The notes: generated from the sequence alone by a model not told the origin. A stretch of DNA of 63,712 bases, filler included, from Reticulomyxa filosa (GCA_000512085.1; 21 parts of 21 records of this genome joined end to end with filler, not necessarily neighbours in it); one strand, 5' to 3'. Positions 6,635-25,099 are shown, counted from the whole stretch's first letter. A program made the numbers and translations.

Positions 6635-7314
6635 TGATGTTGTTGATGTTGTTGATGTTGTTGATGTTGATGCTGGTGTTGATGTTGCAATGAGTGAATA
6701 TCGAGGGACGGAGTCGGGGTATTGGGTTGGGCGAACATGTGCGAATACATGAGCGGATTGAGTGCTGGATTATTGATAGCAAGACTGGTGGACAAGTCAT
6801 GAGTCATATGCATCGACGGCAATTGTCCGGCGGCGGAAGCGAGCAAAAGAGAGGACGCGTTGTTGTTTGGGATGCCATCGGCGGCGTACGATACTCGTAT
6901 TTGCCTGCCATCGATGACTTTTTCCGGCTGGGCCACGGCAGCGGCAGCAGCTTGCGGCGTCTTGAACACGACAAAGCCATAGCCTTTGGAACTGCCCGTG
7001 GCTCTGTCGCGAATGATGACAGCCTCTTCCAACTCACCGTACTGAGAAAAGATCTTTTGTAACTTTTCGTCGGTCGTTTTGAATGACAACGAAGCCACAA
7101 ACAGTCTCCGCAGCTCAATGTTTACTCGATTCGTGTGTCCGATCAGTCCCACTCCCCCGCCGTTGTTAGCACTTGTCAGGCTGCTGTTGAATCCTGCGCC
7201 AATTCGGCTCGTGTTTCCTTTCATGTTGTTGTTGTTGTTGTTATTGTTGTTGACATTGATGCTATTCATATTGTTGCTATTACTCATATTATTCATGTTA
7301 TTTATGTTGTTAAG

Positions 7315-15628: not shown

Positions 15629-18600
15629 GTAAATCAGTCATCTCACCCATTGTTCATTTTGTGTGGTGTTTTCAATATAAGGTTTTCATACTTCCATTTG
15701 GTCACAAAAATATTTGCTTTTTGAATTTAAGGTGGACTTTTTTTTTTTTTTTGCCATTCAAACACAAAGTTCGTTGGACACTCACTATTCGCTACATTAT
15801 GCATTTTTTTTTTTTGGAAATCAAAAACTTTGAAACGTTACCATTTTTTTTNNNNNNNNNNNNNNNNNNNNNNNNNNNNNNNNNNNNNNNNNNNNTTAAT
15901 TAATTAANNNNNNNNNNNNNNNNNNNNNNNNNNNNNNNNNNNNNNNNNNNNATTAAACAAGTTATTGAAATGATTAAATCCGATACACAATCAACGTATT
16001 AAATAATCTTTTATTATTATTATTTATTTATTATTTTTATTATTTCCAGTCGCAAATTATATTTAGCATGAAACAGATCAAATGTCAAAGTGTTTCAATT
16101 TAAATTGATTTAACTTTGATTTCATTTCTCGAACGAGATTTGGTTTAATGAGCCAATTTTGCTATTTGAATTGACAGTTTGAAATTATCAACACTGTCAA
16201 AAGCTTATATTCGTGCTGATCAATATACAATCTCCAATTTACCTTTGCATCACTTCCAATATCATAATTGATTCTCCACAATTGATATGTCATTGTTAAA
16301 TTGTGATTAGATAACTTTTTACTCAATCGAATATAATTTCACTAATTATTGTTGTCTTCTTAATTATAATGGCAGCATATGTGAAATTACATTTACAATG
16401 TAGGAGAAATGTCAAATATCCAATCATCACAAATTGACAGATTTATCATTTACTAACGGCGTGTATCAAAACAATTGAAAAGTGAATTATTTCTTTTTGA
16501 TTTTTTTTAAATAATAATTTTAATGTTCTTGATATCTTAAACAAATTATATTCATCGTAAAAAATTCCTGAACTTTAATATTTTAAATCTAAAAGAAAGT
16601 AGAAAATATGCGGATAGATTCAATTTGGTTTACTTGTGTCTTTGAATAAACTGATAACTGGAATTAATTACAGGTAAACATACAATATATCTTCTATTGT
16701 TTAAATTTGGTGACAATTTGTGTAATGATAAATCACAAAGAATTATAGAATCGGACGAATAAAATAAAAACAAAAAATTTATTCAAATTTCCAGTTTGCG
16801 CTAACTGTTTTGATTTTAGTATAGAAGTACCCGCTAACTTTGACGTTTTTTGCTTCTTGTCTCGATCTTTTATCACGGTCACCGTTGGTAACTCCCACGA
16901 TATTGAATTTTCTGTCATGTACCCCCCCTCTTTATCCGTCATGTACCCCCCCTCTCTTTATTCATTGATCAATCCCAAAATGATCATTTCCTTTGCCGTC
17001 AGGAGAACACCAAGAATGCGAAGCTTGCCNNNNNNNNNNNNNNNNNNNNNNNNNNNNNNNNNNNNNNNNNNNNTTAATTAATTAANNNNNNNNNNNNNNN
17101 NNNNNNNNNNNNNNNNNNNNNNNNNNNNNAAACATTTAAAAATGGTGTTGGTCATTTTCCATTGAAATTATTTTTGTCGACAAACTCTTTTGTATGGTGT
17201 GGCGAAGTGCTCTTCTTTGACTCAGAATCTTGGCAAATGAACAGAAAATTTGTCCTTATTGGTATTTAAAGACTAGCAGCATTACATAGAAGCAAAGAAA
17301 AAAAGGAATGACCCTTTTCGATTGAAAGCAGAGTATGTTTTGTACTGTTTTTTTATTTAGTTTGATGTTGATGCGATTTATTGACTGAGTATTTTTGTTT
17401 GAAAAGCTTTGAGATTTGAACAACACAAAAGGATCCAAATTGAATGTCAAACGGTTTAGGTGATATCGTCTATTGTGATACACAGAAATTTGATACAACC
17501 ATTTCGTTTGATAACGAGTTATTTCATGTCATCTTTCGGTCAAACTAGATCAATTGTTAAAAATAACTCAGCTGATGATGAAAGCAAATATCAGCTGATA
17601 TCACAATTAATGAAACGTTTTTTTAAAATCAAATTCACCAAACAGTCGATTCTTTTGTGTCCATACCTAAAAAATGTACAAAATAAATTTTCGATTATTG
17701 ACGAAATAATGTCAATCGCTTATGCAAATATATCGAAAACATCTTTAAAGACAAAAAAAACTTAATAACAGACTCTTTAAACTATCTCAGCCACTTACAT
17801 AAATGAAATTTCTTCGGCAATCCGGGAATATAAATTTTCTCCTTGTAAAGTTTGAAAACAAGGATTAAAACAAATGATTCAACATAAAAAAATAAAAAAT
17901 CTGGAACTAGACCCTTTTTAAGGAACTCTTCAACTCATCATAATTTTTTAAAAAATTTTCAATTCAAAAATAAATTTTTATTTATTTATTCGTTCAATTA
18001 ATAATTATTGAGCTGTTTTATCAATCAAATGTGTTGGAGGGGGAGCGCAGTTCAAGTTTTTTTAGTTTCAAGCTTTAATGTCTTTTAACGACAACAGCAA
18101 AGCTTTTGTGTTTGACTAACTTGTAAAGGAACATGGAGAAGGAATTTTTTGTGGATACACGCAAAGTTTTGCGTGTTCGTTGTTATCAAACTAGCTTTTT
18201 TTCGGTTTTAACATTTACCACTTTCAATAACGAACAAAAAAAAAATTGAACGTGTTCATGAATTTTGTGGCAAACAGTTGGGTCTACTTTAAAAAAAATT
18301 AATGGTCTACGACGTCGACCACAAATTGGTATCCACCAATGAAAGAGAAACATCACAACGAAGACTTTACTAACAACTTCTCCAAAAATGGACAGATTCT
18401 TTTTTTTTTATCCGCAATGTTACTGCTTGATGGCCTGATTAAAAAAGTGCTACATCAGATTATGAAAATGCAAATATTGTATTCCTCAATTACATTTTTT
18501 GCTGAAAAAGAACATGATGTACTGATATACTTTGCGGACAAATTGATCGAAAGAAATTAATAGACAATCAACAGCACGTTTTCCGTGTCATTTATTTATA

Positions 18601-19207
18601 AAATCAATTGAGTATTGATCCATTTTATTGTAAAGGGAAAAAAGAATTTGTATAAATTTATTCTTTTGTTCAAAACAAATTCAAGACCACAACACTATTG
18701 TAAAAATTGTGATGAAAGTGCAAACAAAAAGAAAATAGCAAGTCTATATTTTATATATAACAAAAATTAAAAGTTGCTGTTATGCTACAAAAAATTTATC
18801 GAATTTCTGACTCTATTCAATAATGAAAGAGAAATAGAATTATATTAACAAGAAATTTACTAAATAACAGATTTCACGCTCAATCAAAACATCTGATAAA
18901 AACTCTGGACAGGAAAGTTGTTTTTTTAATTTCACTAATTTAAACAAATAAATTGTATCGTTAAAAAGAAGTTGCAAGCACTGCGAGCCAAAATAATGTT
19001 TTCTGAAAAATATTTTGAAATTTGCAATGAAAATGATAATTACAATCTGCATCTACGTTAAAAAAGGAAAAATTTTCAAATTCACTTGCTTTATCTAAAA
19101 TTTTTATTGAATTTTTCATTGTAAAAGAGTTTTGCTGAATGTAACCAGTTTCTAAAACAAACTAACCCAATTTACAAAACGATTCATAAATAAACACAAA
19201 AAATCGA

Positions 19208-22200
19208 TCAAAATGTTCCACCACGTTGTTCCACAAGTCGTTTTTGTTGAGGTGTCAAGCCAATTATATCCTTCCAAGTACTACCTGTAATCGATAAGCC
19301 ACTTTGAACACCACTTCTCCAAATACATTTTCCTATACCGATCGTTTTACTATCACCAATACTCCATAATCGAATTGTTTTATCATTTGAAAATGACATG
19401 AGTTTTGAAGCATCTCGTGATAATTGTATTCCTCTAATGTTACTATTGTGTCCTTCCAACAATTGGATTTGTTGTCGTAAAGACACATCCCATACTCTGA
19501 TATTGTTATCATATGAATAGGAAATAATTTTGGAGCCATCTGGTGAAAATTGCACTCCGTGCACAGAAGTTGAATGTCCTTCTAATACTTGGGGCTGCTT
19601 TTCAGATAATACATCCCATATTCGAATGGTCTTATCATCTGAACACGATACAATCTGAGTACCATCTGGCGAAAATTGTGCTTCATTTACCTTTTCCAAA
19701 TGTCCTTCTAATGACAAAAGTTGATTTCCAGAAGATACATCCCATACTCGTAATATATTATCCGTTGCATATGATGATACAATTTTAGACCCATCTGGTG
19801 AAAATTGCACCTTATCGACGATATCTGGATGTCCAAATTCTTGAAGTTGTCTTCCAGATGATACATCCCACAATCGAAAGTTGTCATCAGAAGAGCAAGA
19901 TGTAAACTTGGACCCGTCTGGTGAAAGTTGTACCCGATTTATGCCATATGGATGTCCATGAAATAATTGGATATGTTTTCCTGATGATACATCCCATATT
20001 TGAATGGTCTCACCATTTGAATAGGATACAAGTTTGGAGCCATCTGGTGAAGATTGAATTTCTCGAATGTCCTCTGAATCTCCTTCTAATATTTGAATCT
20101 GTTTTCCAGACAGTGCATCGCATATTCGGATTGTTTTATCTTCCGAGTGAGATATAATTTTGGAGCCATCGGGTGAAAATAGTACTCCACTAACGTTGTG
20201 TGAATGACCTTCAAAGATTTGGATTTGCTTTCCTGATTGCACATCCCACAATCGAATTGTTGTATCCAATGAGCATGACATAATTTTGGAGCCATCTGAT
20301 GAAAATTTCACTGCTGCTATATTTGCTAAATATTGTTCCGTTAACTGGATTTTTCGTTCTAAGCCAATGTCCCATATTCGAATTGTCCCATCTTCGGAAT
20401 AGGATAAAATTTTGGAATCCTTTGAAAAAAATTGCACTCCAGTTACACGACGCAAATGTCCTTCTAATATTTGGAGTGTCTTTCCGGATGATATGTCCCA
20501 TATTCGAACCGTCCTATCATCTGAGCCAGATACAACTTTAGAGCCATCACGGGAAAATCGCGCAGCATTTATACTGCGCGAATGTCCTTCCAGCACATGA
20601 AGCTGTTTTCCAGATGGCAAATCCCATATTCGAATTACGTTATCATTTGAATAGGACAGGATTTTGGATTCATCTTGGGATACATGAATTCCATTTGTCT
20701 CAGCTGAAATTCTGTCAAAGATTTGGATTTGTTGTCCCGAAGATGCATCCCATATTCGAATCGTGTTATCATAGGAATATGATATAACCTTTGATCCGGC
20801 AGATAAAAACTTTGCTACTCGTACATAATTTGAATGTCCTTCTAACACTTGAAGCTGTTTTCCGGACAATACGTCCCATATTCGAATTGTGTTATCCTTT
20901 GAAGACGATACAATGTTCAAACTGTCGGATGAAAATCGTACTGCACTCACCCAATCTGAATGTCCTTCCAATACCAAAAGTTGTTTTCCAGATGATACCT
21001 CCCATATTCGAATAGTTTTATCCCGTGAGCATGATACAATCTTTGAACCATCAGGTGAAAATTCTGCCGCATTCACGAATCCTGAATGTTCTTCCCATAC
21101 TTGAATTTGTTGACCTGACGACACGTCCCATAGTCGAATGGTGCAATCTTGTGAGCAAGATGCAACTTTAGATCCATCTGGTGAAAACTGGGCTTCATAC
21201 ACTGCATGTAAGTGTCCTTCCAATAAATGAATCTGTTTTTGTAATGATATATCCCATATTCGAATAGTGCCATCGGATGAATATGACAACATTTTGGTCC
21301 CATCAGATGAAAAGACAATTCCCAATATGCCGCCTGAATGTCCTTCCAAATAGGCGTATTCGCCAAAGTAAACTTCATTCATTGATGCATTTGTGAAGTT
21401 CACCTTATTTAGACAAGCTTGAACGAAACGGACGTTATTCAAATTAGCATTAGTAAAGTCGGTTCCTTCAAGAAATGCATGATCTAAGATTGCATGGGGA
21501 ATTTTTATATTACTCCAATCTTGATAATGCATATTGATATTCGCTGAATTGAGTATGGTAATTGCATTTGCTGCTGCGATGCTAACATGCTCATTTGTTT
21601 TGGATGCTCCGATAATTTGGAACAATATTGGCTCTAAATTCACAAATATCGGATTGGTGTCGTGAATTCGTTCTGCAATAAATTGAATAATTCCCATTTC
21701 TTCATTTAATAATTTGCGATTGATAAACAACTGTTGGACATATGTTTCAAACTGTTGTTGCTTGGCAATATTTTCATTAATCGTGTTGGACTTCCATAAA
21801 AGGATATCAAATATCATTTTCTGAGCGACATAATATTCTTGACACGATTTATGTAAAAATTGATATTTATTATCACCAACCCTTCTTAATACAAATTTAG
21901 CAACACTTCCACCTTTGAAATATTTTTCCCAAATATCTTGCACTTTTGTAATTGCAGTGTCAGTAATTTCATCCGTTGTTTTTATTTCTTGTTTTTCATC
22001 CACAATACTTTTATTTTCATACTCATTTTCAATTTCTGGATCTGATTGACTCCAAATTTCATCTTCATTTTGATATTGAAAATCCGATTCGACTGCAACC
22101 TGATTCCCTTGTATAAACATATCCAATCCCAAATCGAGACAATACTGTCTCAATGTTGATTTGATGTTACGAATATTCATTTGAATACGTAATTCTGCCA

Positions 22201-24620
22201 ATTTGGAAATAATGTTTTGACTGTGAATGTCAATCCATTGATCATTGAATGCTTCATATACTTGTGCTTTTGAAATTCTGCTTCCCATACCAAATTGCTT
22301 TACCAATGACGGCAATACGCTTAAAATGAGTTGAAGAAGAAATGGCTCTTCGATCATTTTTTGTAAATTTGGATAATTATTCAATGTTTCCTCATATTTT
22401 GTCGATGTCCAATCACTGCTGTCATCTTTGTTCATATTTTTAGACTTTAATTTTGCAAATTTATCAATGTAGCTATGCATTTGCTGTTTGGTGAATGGCC
22501 ATAGATACACTAGCGATGTACTGTTTTGATTCACGCCAATCAAAGCATTTTTAATATCGTCATCACTCAATACTTTACTTCGACACGTGACAATCACTTT
22601 TGAATTCCACTGATTCAAATTGAATCGATCATAAAAGTACATATCATTTTCATTTTTACGATAAAAGTCGAATATTTCATCAAAGCCATCCATAATGAAC
22701 ACAAATGACACTTTTTCCCGAACTGCGTCCATGATATCTTTATTGATATGTTTACTTTGTAATGCTTGCAAAATGATATCTCTTTCATTTTTTTTATTGT
22801 AAACTTTTGGAAATGAAATATAAACTGGAATAGCTTTTTTTGAATCCGAGATATAATTATTCCATAACGTCTCTTCCAAATGACGACAGAATATACTTTT
22901 TCCCGATCCCGATTTCCCTTGAATGATGATTACCTTTTGTTGATATGCATGTTTCTTTTCATCATCTTCTCCTTGCTGCAAGCATTCAATGGCATGTTGA
23001 TGACAATCAAATGAATCATTTTTTTCATTATCGTCACCATCGATATGTGGATAGTTATTTGCTTGCAATGGAATATATGTTTCGAGTGCCTGAGATATAG
23101 CAATATCTTCATCTATTTCTTGCTTCCTTGACTCTTGCAACAATAATGCAAAGTCGACACAGCTTGCTGGACTCTTATCTCCAATAATATACTTTTTGTA
23201 ATATTCATATAAAATTACATAGATTGCCTTTCCTTTCTTTTTCTCTGGAGTGAATTTGCAAAGCTGTTCATACACAAATAGTGCCATTTTCAATGGCACG
23301 CTATCATTCATTTCCAATTCACTTTTTTTGGACAGCTGTGGCGGTTTCAATATTCCAATATCAAAGTGAGATTTGTAGCGATTTGCAATTTTTTGTATCT
23401 CTTTGTCTTCCAACCATTCACAAATGATATCATTGATTTTCGTCAATGTCTCATCGCTGGCCTGTTTGAAATCTTCTTCAATATCTGAATTCTTTGGCTT
23501 CCATGCTCGAATATGCTCATAAAACAAATGACTCAATTTTGGATTCTCAATTACCGTATATCCCTCCAATGTCGTAAAGTTTTTTAATGTCGCTTGCATT
23601 TCAATATATACATCATCTTTTGGAACAAACAATTTAATGTTATGAAATCTGTGATGTGTTTTCGATTGTCTTTCAAAAAAGTCTTTATCCTCCGACACAA
23701 TCAAATGAAATTTCTCTGCTTTTTTCATCACTGCCACTGCTGTTTGCAATTTGGTTGCATTGTCACATAAGATTGTAAATCTCCCAATATCGAATACTTG
23801 ATTGTAATCTCCACCATAATCGCACTTGATTTTTTCCAGTAATCTCACGCGATCTTTTATCTTGGGTGGCTTCACAACTGTTATCAGATATTTCTGTAAC
23901 TCACACACTAAATTTATTATCTCATTACTCGTCATTGCATGTTCGCTTCGAGTGATTAAATCTTCCAAACTCGTTGCATGCTGTCTTATTTTTTGGGCTT
24001 TTATTTCATAAGATAGTCCTACTTTTATTGCATACAAGCATTGATAGTGTTTGTCATTCACAGGAATTGGATTATCACTCGAGCTGATCCAATGTTCCGA
24101 ATTTAAAATCATTGCTTTTGCAATTGACGTAACAGCCGGTTGTCCACAGTCTGGACAGCGATACGATGTCTGTTCTGAGTTGAATGAAATATTACCAAAT
24201 CCCATATTCACCCACACTGCCAATCGTGCCTTTGCAGCCAAGCAATCAGTGTTTGTGCAAAACCCTTGCAAATTAATCCCAGGCTTAGTTTCTCCAATAT
24301 CTGCTTTTTCATCCTCTTTTTTCAATTGCTCTGATTTCTCATCCATTTCGGGTTGTTCTATGATAAGACTTTGTGTGTGTGTCTATTTGTTTGTTTTATG
24401 TAATGCAAATATTCAAATCAATTTTATTTATATATATATACATATATATATATATTTTTTTTTTTTTGCAACTGTGATCTGCTCGATCACAACTGATACG
24501 TCGCCATTATTTTGTTCGAGCTTTTTCTTTAGATCTTCTTCTTTCATAATGTCGCCGTATAATCTTAGCAGTGCCTTCATTTCCATTTCATATTTACCTG
24601 ATTCGGGCACACTTTGCATT
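19208..24620 (-). CDS. NLR-like STAND protein: helical CUE/UBA-like exon + Cys-rich module + RelA/SpoT-like NTase + NACHT + pentapeptide repeats + 16 WD40 repeats
   Basis: 1712-aa uninterrupted ORF. Walker A GKSGSGKS (~22895-22920), Walker [22 protein letters not shown], pentapeptide [23 protein letters not shown], and 16 x 42-aa WD40. An upstream exon ([13 protein letters not shown]...VIEQIT) joins in frame through intron ~24383-24472; the start codon is uncertain. Confidence 0.92.
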
Positions 24621-25099
24621 CCTCCTAAAAGTTTGCCACAGTGCAATGCATTTGTAAACACATGCATTTTATCATGCATACGCGTACCTTTTTTGGGTTC
24701 AAAATAACCACACAAAACGAACCGAAGGGCACACAAGTGCGCGTGCACACTATATTGTCTTAATTTTTTCCTCTTGTGGAATTTCTCTTATCTCCAGTCA
24801 CAGGTGTCGTCTTGTTTTTCTGCGTTATGCTTCTCTTTGTAATATTCTCTTTTTGCACATTGTCAAGCATCCCAGCAGAAATCACGTCGAACGCAATGTT
24901 ATTTTTAACAATCACACATCAGTAGTTTGACAGAATCATAGCAATATGTTCTATTTTATCATTGTTAGTGTTCGACTATCATTGANNNNNNNNNNNNNNN
25001 NNNNNNNNNNNNNNNNNNNNNNNNNNNNNTTAATTAATTAANNNNNNNNNNNNNNNNNNNNNNNNNNNNNNNNNNNNNNNNNNNNATTAAAAAAGATGC

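What the first reader, a model, noticed from the sequence alone, without database searches (positions are those of the whole stretch)
19208..24346. NLR-like receptor with a RelA/SpoT (alarmone-synthetase-like) effector: candidate nucleotide-signalling immune system in a protist
Seen: N-terminal to the NACHT P-loop, at ~23520-23900, the protein reads [14 protein letters not shown]...[16 protein letters not shown]...[18 protein letters not shown]...YIEMQAT. This keeps the order and spacing of the RelA/SpoT synthetase motifs (K..S/R...K, DxxxR, Y/H-x-x-H/N, EiQ). It is followed by NACHT, pentapeptide repeats and 16 WD40 repeats. Established: effector-NACHT-repeat is the NLR/STAND architecture; RelA_SpoT N-termini are known in some fungal NLRs; bacterial toxic small alarmone synthetases act in phage defence by making (pp)pApp or pyrophosphorylating tRNA. 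Inference: ligand binding by the WD40 sensor oligomerises NACHT and activates a pyrophosphokinase that produces an alarmone or a toxic modification. To my knowledge this has not been characterised in Rhizaria.
Basis: partly seen in the sequence, partly recalled or inferred. Interest (0 to 1): 0.88.

Follow-up and report, generated by a model that had tools for sequence, protein, structure and literature searches.

The report
Foraminiferal NLR-like receptor with alarmone-synthetase effector
This Reticulomyxa filosa gene encodes an NLR-type receptor (NACHT ATPase plus 16 WD40 repeats) whose N-terminal effector is a conserved, apparently active RelA/SpoT-type pyrophosphokinase closest to bacterial toxin enzymes; the same layout is annotated in a few fungal NLRs but has not been described or tested in protists.

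Summary
Window 19208-24346 (-) is one intact 1712-codon ORF of Reticulomyxa filosa. Residues 121-310 are a RelA/SpoT-homologue (RSH) synthetase domain. Pfam alone is sub-threshold (19 bits against a cut-off of 27). The link becomes solid through four other results:
- phmmer reaches bacterial RelA_SpoT proteins at E down to 8e-8.
- A family profile hits Tas1 at 2.8e-17.
- The top 50 Foldseek matches are all RSH enzymes.
- An independent structure aligner gives Z 8.8-14 for RSH enzymes against at most 8.3 for other nucleotidyltransferases.

The catalytic Asp186 and Glu249 and the basic and aromatic motif residues are conserved in 41-43 of 43 paralogs. This domain is also the most constrained part of the gene (dN/dS about 0.05, against 0.33-0.44 for the WD40 part).

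NACHT, pentapeptide repeats and 16 WD40 repeats follow. The genome carries at least 57 long paralogs plus dozens of fragments. A conserved upstream exon encoding a CUE-like domain, and a four-cysteine beta-sandwich, precede the enzyme, so the gene probably starts near 24619.

The same domain order is already annotated in rare fungal NLRs, so this is a new member of a known kind. Enzyme activity, substrate and immune role remain inferences.

The parts
24473..24619 (-). Probable first exon (49 codons, ATG at 24619-24617) encoding a CUE/UBA-like helical domain. It is conserved upstream of many paralogs.
   Evidence: tblastn of the paralogs' N-terminal extensions hits this stretch at E 1e-9 to 2e-27. 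The same exon lies upstream of the paralog genes in L001 (2657-2803) and L002 (2574-2714). Pfam CUE gives E 0.029 here; paralog P0010 scores 21.3 bits against a cut-off of 21.1. It was searched by reference as a separate exon and was not joined to the main ORF.
24383..24472 (-). Putative 90-nt intron containing an (A)n(TA)n tract. The acceptor is TAG|ACA at 24383/24382. The donor is uncertain.
   Evidence: Sequence read directly. The acceptor context AAATAG|AC is shared with paralog locus L001. The only in-frame GT donor is ACA|GTTGCA at 24472. No RNA run was listed to confirm it.
19208..24346 (-). Main ORF, 1712 codons plus stop. The reading frame is open upstream to 24382.
23987..24295 (-). 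N-terminal all-beta module (aa 18-120) with four conserved cysteines (C30, C35, C64, C67), probably zinc-binding.
   Evidence: AlphaFold model from 43 paralogs has pLDDT about 90 over this stretch, all strands. C30 and C35 are invariant; C64 and C67 are at least 90% conserved. Only a generic beta-sandwich match was found, Z 6.5. No Pfam family.
23417..23986 (-). RelA/SpoT-homologue (RSH) synthetase-like domain (aa 121-310), the putative effector. Key residues are K164, R168, K172, D186, R189, K221, R233, E249, Q251, H273 and Y276.
22967..23416 (-). Helical linker region (aa 311-460) between the enzyme and NACHT.
   Evidence: AlphaFold secondary structure. Only generic four-helix-bundle matches, Z about 6.
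22460..22933 (-). NACHT NTPase domain (aa 472-629). Walker A is at 22895-22918 and Walker B at 22676-22705.
   Evidence: PF05729, E 6.9e-9, 36.2 bits against a cut-off of 26.7. Motif positions.
21524..22459 (-). Region after NACHT (aa 630-941), presumed helical/winged-helix arm of the STAND module. It has no family assignment.
   Evidence: No Pfam hit beyond the NACHT/nSTAND models. dN/dS 0.11-0.15.
21359..21523 (-). Pentapeptide repeats (aa ~942-996) bridging NACHT and WD40. By coordinates they overlap the first WD40 unit.
   Evidence: PF00805, 29.7 bits against a cut-off of 20.2
19361..21376 (-). Sixteen WD40 repeats (aa 991-1662) at a strict 42-residue period, the putative sensor.
   Evidence: Variability concentrates at repeat positions 15, 16, 18, 21, 32, 34 and 36. 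dN/dS is 0.33-0.44, the highest in the gene.
19211..19360 (-). C-terminal tail (aa 1663-1712), ending ...[17 protein letters not shown].
   Evidence: No family assigned.

Best explanation
The gene encodes a STAND/NLR-type receptor of the foraminifer Reticulomyxa filosa. Its layout is (CUE-like exon) - four-Cys beta-sandwich - RSH pyrophosphokinase domain - helical linker - NACHT - pentapeptide - 16 WD40.

Shown here:
- the domain identities;
- the RSH fold;
- the full set of catalytic and ATP-binding residues;
- strong purifying selection on the enzyme and relaxed or diversifying evolution of the WD40 part;
- membership of a family of more than 57 paralogs.

Inferred:
- The WD40 propellers bind a non-self or danger ligand.
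- This releases NACHT-driven oligomerisation, which switches on the clustered RSH domains.
- The RSH domains transfer pyrophosphate from ATP to a nucleotide acceptor. The nearest solved relative is the (p)ppApp-synthesising toxin Tas1, so the acceptor is most likely an adenine or guanine nucleotide.
- ATP is drained and/or a toxic or signalling alarmone is made, shutting down the affected part of the syncytial cell.

The RSH domain is closest to bacterial toxin-type and small RSH enzymes. It was probably recruited from bacteria.

The confidence given (0.55) is for the whole mechanism. Architecture and fold alone stand at about 0.95.
For: Fold and homology:
- Pfam RelA_SpoT E 0.0018 at aa 163-251.
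- Best PDB sequence hit is Tas1.
- phmmer against 1.8e9 representatives reaches P0128, P0132, P0133, P0138, P0141-P0143 and P0146 at E 8e-8 to 5e-4. Six of these eight match RelA_SpoT over the aligned part, and P0138 scores 30 bits against a cut-off of 27.
- BLASTP against P0138 gives 31% identity, E 1e-14.
- The family profile hits Tas1 at E 2.8e-17 over 169 positions, YwaC at 3e-7 and RelP at 8e-4.
- The domain model has core pLDDT above 90. The Foldseek top 50 are all RSH, with Tas1 at 1.1e-8.
- The independent VIA search gives SAS2 Z 14.0, Rel 13.8, RelP 12.8, Tas1 12.6 and CapRel 11.9; other nucleotidyltransferases score 8.3 or less.

Active site:
- K164, D186, G188 and R189 are invariant in 43 paralogs. 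R168, K172, R233, E249 and Q251 are present in 42 of 43; K221, H273 and Y276 in 41 of 43. The exceptions lie in gapped gene models, or are a Lys-to-Arg change at K221.
- These residues align with the DIAG-R, KDY...GYR, E-I-Q and H-x-x-Y motifs of the solved enzymes.

Constraint: dN/dS for RSH is 0.04-0.05, for NACHT 0.05-0.15 and for WD40 0.33-0.44.

Receptor part: NACHT, pentapeptide and 16 WD40 repeats with variable positions typical of a binding face.

Family size: 57 long R. filosa proteins plus dozens of fragments.

Bacterial context of the nearest outsiders.

Precedent for the layout in fungi: PMC4986451.
Against: - No activity, substrate, ligand or phenotype is known for this or any fungal RSH-NLR.
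- Pfam PF04607 is below its own cut-off for this protein.
- The acceptor-base loop is altered. Canonical G-Y is H231-H232 here (Tyr in only 4 of 43 paralogs), and the Q-I-R-T of (p)ppGpp synthetases reads Q-A-T-L. The acceptor therefore cannot be read off.
- dS is near saturation (0.75-2.8), so the dN/dS values are rough.
- No RNA run was listed, so expression and the exon 1 junction are untested.
- The profile hit to Tas1 draws part of its strength from the bacterial rows of alignment A2.
Confidence: 0.55

Rival explanations
1. Same receptor, but the RSH domain acts on tRNA. It would pyrophosphorylate the 3'-CCA end, as the toxSAS/CapRel enzymes do, and so arrest translation rather than consume nucleotides.
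For: CapRel is a strong structural match (Z 11.9, 198 aligned residues; Foldseek E 2e-5). CapRel is an immune effector triggered by a pathogen protein (established knowledge). The altered acceptor loop (H231-H232 in place of G-Y) leaves the acceptor open.
Against: By sequence, Tas1 and the small nucleotide-directed synthetases are clearly closer than CapRel, which does not appear in the sequence searches. The domain is near neutral (pI 6.5, 28 K+R against 30 D+E); this is only weak evidence against an RNA-binding surface.
Confidence: 0.2
2. The enzyme makes a second messenger (an alarmone-like nucleotide) that is read by a separate downstream protein. The NLR would then be a signalling hub and not itself the executioner.
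For: RSH products are signalling nucleotides in bacteria and plastids (established knowledge). Nucleotide second messengers are common in immune pathways.
Against: No candidate receptor or hydrolase was seen. The 7.9-kb contig holds nothing else recognisable. The nearest relatives are toxin-type enzymes (Tas1; eCIS_core-linked multidomain proteins).
Confidence: 0.15
3. The family is not anti-pathogen immunity. It would serve self/non-self recognition between fusing plasmodial networks, analogous to fungal heterokaryon incompatibility, or some other stress control.
For: R. filosa is a syncytial organism with a fusing network (established knowledge). Fungal NACHT-WD40 proteins with variable repeats act in allorecognition (PMC4986451). 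The large, fast-diverging paralog set fits either role.
Against: Nothing here separates the two roles. This rival concerns the trigger, not the biochemical mechanism, and is compatible with the best explanation.
Confidence: 0.2
4. The RSH-like domain is a catalytically dead scaffold or nucleotide-binding module.
For: Pfam score is below threshold. The acceptor loop and the Q-I-R-T motif are diverged.
Against: All Mg/ATP-binding and catalytic residues are kept in 41-43 of 43 paralogs, and this is the most constrained domain of the gene (dN/dS 0.04-0.05). Dead enzymes usually lose such residues.
Confidence: 0.05

Closest known systems
Fungal NLRs with an N-terminal RelA_SpoT domain (RelA_SpoT-NACHT-WD40/unknown; Dyrka et al. 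2014, PMC4986451; Sordariales survey PMC12258605)
   Same: Same domain order: RSH enzyme, then NACHT, then WD40 repeats. Both are read as a direct enzymatic effector on an NLR scaffold. Neither has been characterised functionally.
   Different: - Different supergroup (Rhizaria).
- The RSH domain here is below the Pfam cut-off.
- It is preceded by a CUE-like exon and a four-Cys beta-sandwich, and a pentapeptide stretch precedes the WD40 repeats.
- The family is large (at least 57 long copies in one genome), whereas it makes up less than 1% of annotated fungal NLR N-terminal domains (17 or so in Sordariales).
- Of the two non-foraminiferal phmmer hits above 900 aa, neither has a NACHT domain. 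This hints at independent assembly.
- No fungal sequence could be fetched for a direct comparison.
Tas1, the type VI secretion (p)ppApp synthetase toxin of Pseudomonas aeruginosa (PDB 6OX6)
   Same: Best match by sequence (E 0.11 single sequence, 0.015 with the paralog profile, 2.8e-17 with the wider profile) and by Foldseek (E 1.1e-8, 21% identity). It shares the K-x3-R-x3-K, D-x-x-R, E-x-Q and H-x-x-Y motifs.
   Different: Tas1 is a secreted interbacterial toxin with an immunity protein and has no NACHT or repeats. Its acceptor loop reads G-Y-S-G, against H-H-R-F here. The product of the foraminiferal domain is unknown.
Small alarmone synthetases (RelQ/SAS1, RelP/SAS2/YwaC, exported Streptomyces SAS; ~260-aa RelA/SpoT-domain proteins of Vibrio, Shewanella and Moritella)
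   Same: Same fold (Z 10.9-14.0) and the same catalytic Asp and Glu. The profile reaches YwaC at 3e-7 and named Vibrio/Shewanella proteins. BLASTP to a Vibrio cholerae 257-aa member gives E 4e-6.
   Different: These are stand-alone bacterial enzymes. G-Y is H-H here and Q-I-R-T is Q-A-T-L. Identity is 12-16% in the structural alignments.
CapRel and other toxSAS defence enzymes (fused toxin-antitoxin tRNA pyrophosphokinases)
   Same: An RSH enzyme used as an immune effector, held off in cis and released by a trigger. Structural match Z 11.9.
   Different: In CapRel the sensor is a small C-terminal domain, not NACHT-WD40. CapRel's substrate is tRNA. It is not detected in the sequence searches.
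Bacterial NACHT/Avs STAND anti-phage receptors
   Same: Same logic: repeat or sensor domain, then STAND NTPase, then a variable N-terminal effector.
   Different: A text search of one of the listed STAND survey papers (PMC13581612) found no RelA/SpoT effector. The gene here is eukaryotic, with an intron and eukaryotic neighbours in the paralog loci.

Membership tests
RelA/SpoT homologue (RSH) synthetase domain, Pfam PF04607 | Score at or above Pfam's gathering cut-off (27 bits) | tested here: not met
   19.0 bits, E 0.0018, aa 163-251. Paralog P0001 carries a precomputed PF04607 hit. The bacterial relative P0138 scores 30 bits.
RelA/SpoT homologue (RSH) synthetase domain, Pfam PF04607 | RSH-type alpha/beta nucleotidyltransferase fold | tested here: met
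   Foldseek top 50 are all RSH, with Tas1 at E 1.1e-8. VIA-align gives Z 14.0-8.8 for 11 RSH entries and 8.3 or less for other nucleotidyltransferases.
RelA/SpoT homologue (RSH) synthetase domain, Pfam PF04607 | Basic ATP-phosphate-binding motif (K/R-x3-R/S-x3-K) | tested here: met
   K164 (43 of 43), R168 and K172 (42 of 43), aligned with IKSRERAMQK of Tas1.
RelA/SpoT homologue (RSH) synthetase domain, Pfam PF04607 | Mg-binding Asp in the D-x-(x)-G/A-R strand | tested here: met
   D186, G188 and R189 are invariant in 43 paralogs. They align with DLAR of Tas1 and DIAGVR of YwaC.
RelA/SpoT homologue (RSH) synthetase domain, Pfam PF04607 | Catalytic Glu of the E-x-Q motif | tested here: met
   E249 and Q251 are present in 42 of 43 paralogs. 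E is invariant and Q near-invariant in the 24-row alignment that includes the bacterial relatives. They align with GEIQV of Tas1 and AEIQIRT of YwaC.
RelA/SpoT homologue (RSH) synthetase domain, Pfam PF04607 | G-Y acceptor-base loop of (p)ppGpp synthetases | tested here: not met
   H231-H232 stand in place of G-Y, with Tyr in 4 of 43 paralogs. R233 after it is conserved. The acceptor specificity is therefore open.
RelA/SpoT homologue (RSH) synthetase domain, Pfam PF04607 | Pyrophosphokinase activity | not testable with these tools
   Needs an enzyme assay.
NLR / STAND receptor (NACHT clade) | NACHT NTPase with Walker A and Walker B | tested here: met
   PF05729, 36.2 bits against a cut-off of 26.7. 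GKSGSGKS at aa 477-484 and [10 protein letters not shown] at aa 548-557.
NLR / STAND receptor (NACHT clade) | Tripartite layout: N-terminal effector, central NOD, C-terminal superstructure-forming repeats | tested here: met
   RSH aa 121-310, NACHT aa 472-629, 16 WD40 repeats aa 991-1662.
NLR / STAND receptor (NACHT clade) | Ligand-induced oligomerisation and a role in immunity or non-self recognition | not testable with these tools
   Only indirect signs: a large paralog family, and a conserved effector against a fast-evolving repeat domain.
Fungal RelA_SpoT-NACHT NLRs | Common descent of the RSH and NACHT modules with the fungal proteins | not tested
   No fungal sequence could be retrieved. 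Of the two non-foraminiferal phmmer hits above 900 aa, neither has NACHT.
Tas1-type (p)ppApp synthetase toxins | Adenine-nucleotide acceptor and very fast ATP consumption; secretion-system delivery with an immunity protein | not testable with these tools
   Closest solved relative. There is no delivery domain or immunity gene here, and the acceptor loop differs.

The most novel reading that the evidence does not exclude
Rhizaria assembled, independently of fungi, an NLR family of more than 100 gene models. Its death or signalling effector would be a bacterial-toxin-derived (Tas1-like) pyrophosphokinase. (p)ppApp-type nucleotide poisoning or alarmone signalling would then operate as an innate-immune or allorecognition output in a eukaryotic cytoplasm. 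The CUE-like head might couple the receptor to ubiquitin-marked targets.
Probability: 0.35. Interest if true: 0.8.

Novelty: new member of a known kind. Interest (0 to 1): 0.62.

Why it matters
RSH enzymes are known as bacterial and plastid stress signallers and, more recently, as bacterial toxins and anti-phage effectors. Their presence on eukaryotic NLR scaffolds is so far only a domain annotation in a few fungi.

This foraminifer has made the combination a large family. The active site is conserved and strongly constrained, and the enzyme is closest to a bacterial ATP-draining toxin. That gives a second, probably independent, eukaryotic case and plenty of natural sequence variation. It also gives a clean, testable question: do eukaryotic NLRs kill or signal through (p)ppApp/(p)ppGpp-type chemistry or through tRNA pyrophosphorylation?

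The finding also adds to the picture of bacterial conflict enzymes being re-used in eukaryotic immunity.

Tried and rejected
- RNA evidence: no RNA run was listed for 23400-24700. Expression and the exon 1 junction are untested.
- Literature: no paper in the library links Reticulomyxa with NACHT, NLR or RelA. A search for bacterial NACHT plus RelA mostly matched the word 'related'.
- NCBIfam gave nothing for the N-terminus.
- ESM Atlas feature searches gave only weak leads: rotifer hypothetical proteins for aa 15-120, and mixed bacterial, diatom and phage clusters for the RSH part. The Atlas shape search found RelA_SpoT clusters and unnamed giant-virus and diatom clusters at TM 0.5-0.6.
- Downstream 2.1 kb (17130-19207): AT-rich (GC 24-32%), with no ORF above 101 aa, no Pfam family, no tRNA, no Rfam family and only chance-level repeats.
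- Bacterial contamination was considered and rejected. The paralog loci lie on R. filosa contigs with eukaryotic neighbours (VASt, Kelch), and the family has a conserved upstream exon and intron.
- WD40 repeats are only about 45% identical to each other (75% at DNA level over 2.9 units). The near-identical, concertedly evolving repeats of some fungal NLRs are therefore not seen here.
- No complex prediction was run, since no specific protein-protein contact is claimed.
- The joined exon 1 plus main ORF protein was deliberately not built or searched. Each exon was searched by reference.

Full report
WHAT IS THERE

The piece (window 17130-24985) is a whole 7856-base contig. It carries one dominant feature: an uninterrupted 1712-codon ORF on the minus strand, 19208-24346. 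A search with its first 449 residues returned the identical protein plus 56 relatives. Every one that carries a name is from Reticulomyxa filosa, and paralog loci map to assembly GCA_000512085.1.

THE RECEPTOR PART

Pfam gives three domains in order:
- NACHT at aa 472-629 (36.2 bits against a cut-off of 26.7), with Walker A GKSGSGKS and Walker [11 protein letters not shown].
- Pentapeptide repeats at aa ~942-996.
- A very strong WD40 signal.

Cutting the C-terminal part at a 42-residue period gives exactly 16 repeats, aa 991-1662. Their consensus is vsSGkQiQ.LEGHs..v.[11 protein letters not shown].SyS.D.TIRIWD. Variability concentrates at positions 15, 16, 18, 21, 32, 34 and 36. This is the usual pattern for a ligand-binding propeller face; that reading is my inference from general WD40 knowledge. 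The repeats are about 45% identical to one another. They are therefore not the near-identical repeats of some fungal NLRs.

THE DOMAIN IN QUESTION

On its own the Pfam evidence is marginal: RelA_SpoT E 0.0018, 19 bits against a cut-off of 27. Four further lines make the assignment secure.

(i) An exhaustive phmmer search of 1.8 billion representatives with aa 1-449 finds the foraminiferal family and also eight outsiders at whole-library E 8e-8 to 5e-4. Six of them match Pfam RelA_SpoT over the aligned stretch, and one (P0138) scores above the cut-off. BLASTP to P0138 gives 31% identity over 134 residues, E 1e-14.

(ii) A profile of the domain (alignment A2: the query, paralogs and these outsiders) hits the (p)ppApp synthetase toxin Tas1 (6OX6) at E 2.8e-17 over 169 positions. 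It also hits B. subtilis YwaC at 3e-7 and S. aureus RelP at 8e-4. The paralog-only profile and the single sequence already put Tas1 first.

(iii) An AlphaFold model of aa 100-345 (mean pLDDT 75.6, core above 90) gives a Foldseek list whose top 50 are all RSH enzymes: Tas1 at 1.1e-8, then RelP, RelQ, an exported Streptomyces SAS, Rel, SpoT, RelA and CapRel.

(iv) A second model of aa 1-460 (pLDDT 81.6) was searched with an aligner that does not depend on Foldseek. Eleven RSH entries score Z 14.0-8.8. The next class, other Pol-beta-type nucleotidyltransferases, scores 8.3 or less.

IS THE ENZYME LIKELY ACTIVE?

In the alignment with bacterial relatives and solved enzymes, the query keeps these residues:
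- the basic ATP-binding motif (K164, R168, K172);
- the Asp strand (F-D186-I-G-R189, against DLAR in Tas1 and DIAGVR in YwaC);
- K221 and R233;
- the catalytic E249-x-Q251 (GEIQ in Tas1, AEIQ in YwaC);
- H273-x-x-Y276.

Across 43 full-length paralogs, K164, D186, G188 and R189 are invariant. The other motif residues are present in 41-42 of 43. The exceptions are gaps in individual gene models or a Lys-to-Arg change at K221. The 100 residues around the active site are the best-conserved part of the N-terminal 460 (85-87% identity to the query, against 47-78% elsewhere).

Codon-level comparison with two paralog loci gives dN/dS of 0.04-0.05 for the RSH core, 0.05-0.15 for NACHT and 0.33-0.44 for the WD40 region. 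dS is close to saturation, so only the ranking should be trusted.

Two features depart from (p)ppGpp synthetases. The G-Y loop that holds the acceptor base is H231-H232 (Tyr in 4 of 43 paralogs). Q-I-R-T reads Q-A-T-L. The acceptor therefore cannot be predicted. The domain is near neutral (pI 6.5), which weakly favours a nucleotide over tRNA.

RELATIVES AND ORIGIN

The nearest outsiders lie in bacterial-style gene arrays. P0138 is a 211-aa protein next to a histidine kinase gene. P0128 is a 3127-aa protein with an eCIS_core domain, two tandem RSH-like domains and a calpain-type peptidase, in a tightly packed same-strand gene array typical of bacteria. P0142 also combines eCIS_core with RelA_SpoT.

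The wider profile reaches ~260-aa 'RelA/SpoT domain-containing proteins' of Vibrio, Shewanella, Moritella and Photobacterium, and cyanobacterial proteins. From memory, the Vibrio ones may be the RelV class; this was not tested.

Recruitment of a bacterial toxin-type or small RSH domain into a eukaryotic STAND scaffold is thus the likeliest origin. This is an inference: no rooted tree was made.

A few metagenomic proteins at 42-59% identity (P0069, P0074, P0084, P0086) suggest relatives in uncultured organisms.

WHAT LIES IN FRONT OF THE ENZYME

Many annotated paralogs carry 70-130 extra N-terminal residues. These hit the window upstream of the ORF at E 1e-9 to 2e-27.

The conserved stretch is an ORF segment at 24473-24619 (-), starting with ATG at 24619. 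It reads [49 protein letters not shown]. It matches the CUE domain weakly (E 0.029), and paralog P0010 reaches the Pfam cut-off (21.3 against 21.1 bits). The same exon lies upstream of the paralog genes in L001 and L002.

Between it and the main ORF lie about 90 bases with an (A)n(TA)n tract. The acceptor context AAATAG|AC (24383/24382) is shared with L001. The only in-frame GT donor is ACA|GTTGCA at 24472, whereas the paralogs use GTAATT or GTATAT further on. No RNA run was listed, so the junction stays open. I searched exon 1 and the main ORF separately by reference and did not build or search the joined protein.

Residues 18-120 fold as a confident all-beta module (pLDDT about 90) with four conserved cysteines (C30, C35, C64, C67). 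It has no Pfam family and only a generic beta-sandwich match (Z 6.5). Residues 311-460 are helical.

SURROUNDINGS

The 2.1 kb downstream (17130-19207) is AT-rich (GC 24-32%). It holds no ORF above 101 aa with a family, no tRNA, no Rfam family and no meaningful repeats.

HOW IT MOST LIKELY WORKS

Shown: an NLR-type layout, with a conserved and apparently competent RSH pyrophosphokinase where other NLRs carry their effector; a fast-evolving WD40 domain; and a large paralog family.

Inferred, by analogy with STAND/NLR proteins and with Tas1 and toxSAS enzymes: the WD40 propellers bind a ligand and NACHT oligomerises. The clustered RSH domains then become active and transfer pyrophosphate from ATP to a nucleotide. 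This drains ATP and/or makes a toxic or signalling alarmone.

Rivals:
- tRNA 3'-CCA pyrophosphorylation;
- a messenger read by a separate partner;
- an allorecognition trigger rather than an anti-pathogen one, in this fusing syncytial organism;
- a dead scaffold, which the conservation pattern makes unlikely.

I put architecture and fold at about 0.95. The activation-to-toxic-or-signalling-pyrophosphokinase mechanism as a whole I put at about 0.55.

COMPARISON WITH WHAT IS KNOWN

RelA_SpoT-NACHT-WD40 NLRs are already listed for fungi (e.g. Gaeumannomyces graminis), as a rare class making up less than 1% of annotated N-terminal domains. The paper's functional note for the domain is 'ppGpp synthesis', with no experiments (PMC4986451). 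They are counted among the canonical N-terminal domains in Sordariales (PMC12258605). A later clustering study could not recover them as a cluster.

The layout is therefore not new. What is new:
- the lineage;
- the size of the family (at least 57 long proteins and dozens of fragments);
- the Tas1-like character of the enzyme, which Pfam misses;
- the CUE-like and four-Cys modules and the pentapeptide bridge.

Neither of the two non-foraminiferal phmmer hits above 900 aa has a NACHT domain. This hints that the foraminiferal and fungal fusions arose separately, but I could not fetch fungal sequences to test it.

No paper in the searched library connects Reticulomyxa with NACHT, NLR or RelA.

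VERDICT

I file the finding as a new member of a known kind and score interest at 0.62. It is a solid, testable case of an alarmone-synthetase-type effector on a eukaryotic NLR, but it has a published architectural precedent and no functional data.

Noticed in passing
window 24473-24619 (-): A conserved upstream exon encodes a CUE/UBA-like domain. It is found in front of many paralogs and is sometimes annotated as a separate small gene. The gene start is probably 24619, not 24346.
   Followed up: partly
window 24440-24467 (-): An (A)13(TA)n microsatellite sits exactly where the paralogs have the end of exon 1 (…TLMNQN|GT). The exon 1 donor of this copy is therefore unclear, either from a real change or from an assembly error in the low-complexity tract.
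   Followed up: partly
window 23987-24295 (-), aa 18-120: A confidently modelled all-beta module with four conserved cysteines (C30, C35, C64, C67) and no Pfam family. Language-model look-alikes are unnamed rotifer proteins (score 0.94). The module also occurs alone or in other contexts among the short hits.
   Followed up: partly
window 19211-19297 (-), aa 1684-1712: The C-terminal tail [29 protein letters not shown] follows the last WD40 repeat. From memory it resembles the tail seen after pentapeptide or WD40 arrays in bacterial proteins, which would fit a bacterial origin of the scaffold. This was not tested.
   Followed up: no
P0128 (metagenome contig of 234857 bases, no DNA fetched): A 3127-aa protein in a bacterial-type gene array with an eCIS_core domain, two tandem RSH-like domains (aa ~2276-2459 and ~2592-2781) and a calpain-type peptidase. 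It looks like a multi-warhead toxin.
   Followed up: partly
L001:3001-8379 (paralog P0003): The closest paralog's reading frame breaks near 6970: an ORF of 1339 aa is followed by a second frame. The public gene model bridges the break with an intron. It may be a pseudogene or an assembly error.
   Followed up: partly
P0001 (RFI_08856), aa 1-385: This gene model carries the C-terminal part of a second RSH-linker region in front of the full N-terminus. It is probably two tandem paralogs merged into one model.
   Followed up: no
P0069, P0074, P0084, P0086 (metagenome contigs of 1-2.5 kb): Environmental proteins 42-59% identical to the N-terminal region. They suggest the family exists in uncultured relatives of R. 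filosa.
   Followed up: no
Fold search atlas, model m65a60636d67c: Among the nearest predicted structures are unnamed clusters from giant viruses (Nucleocytoviricota) and diatoms, TM 0.56-0.59. These may be further unrecognised RSH-like domains in eukaryotes and their viruses.
   Followed up: no
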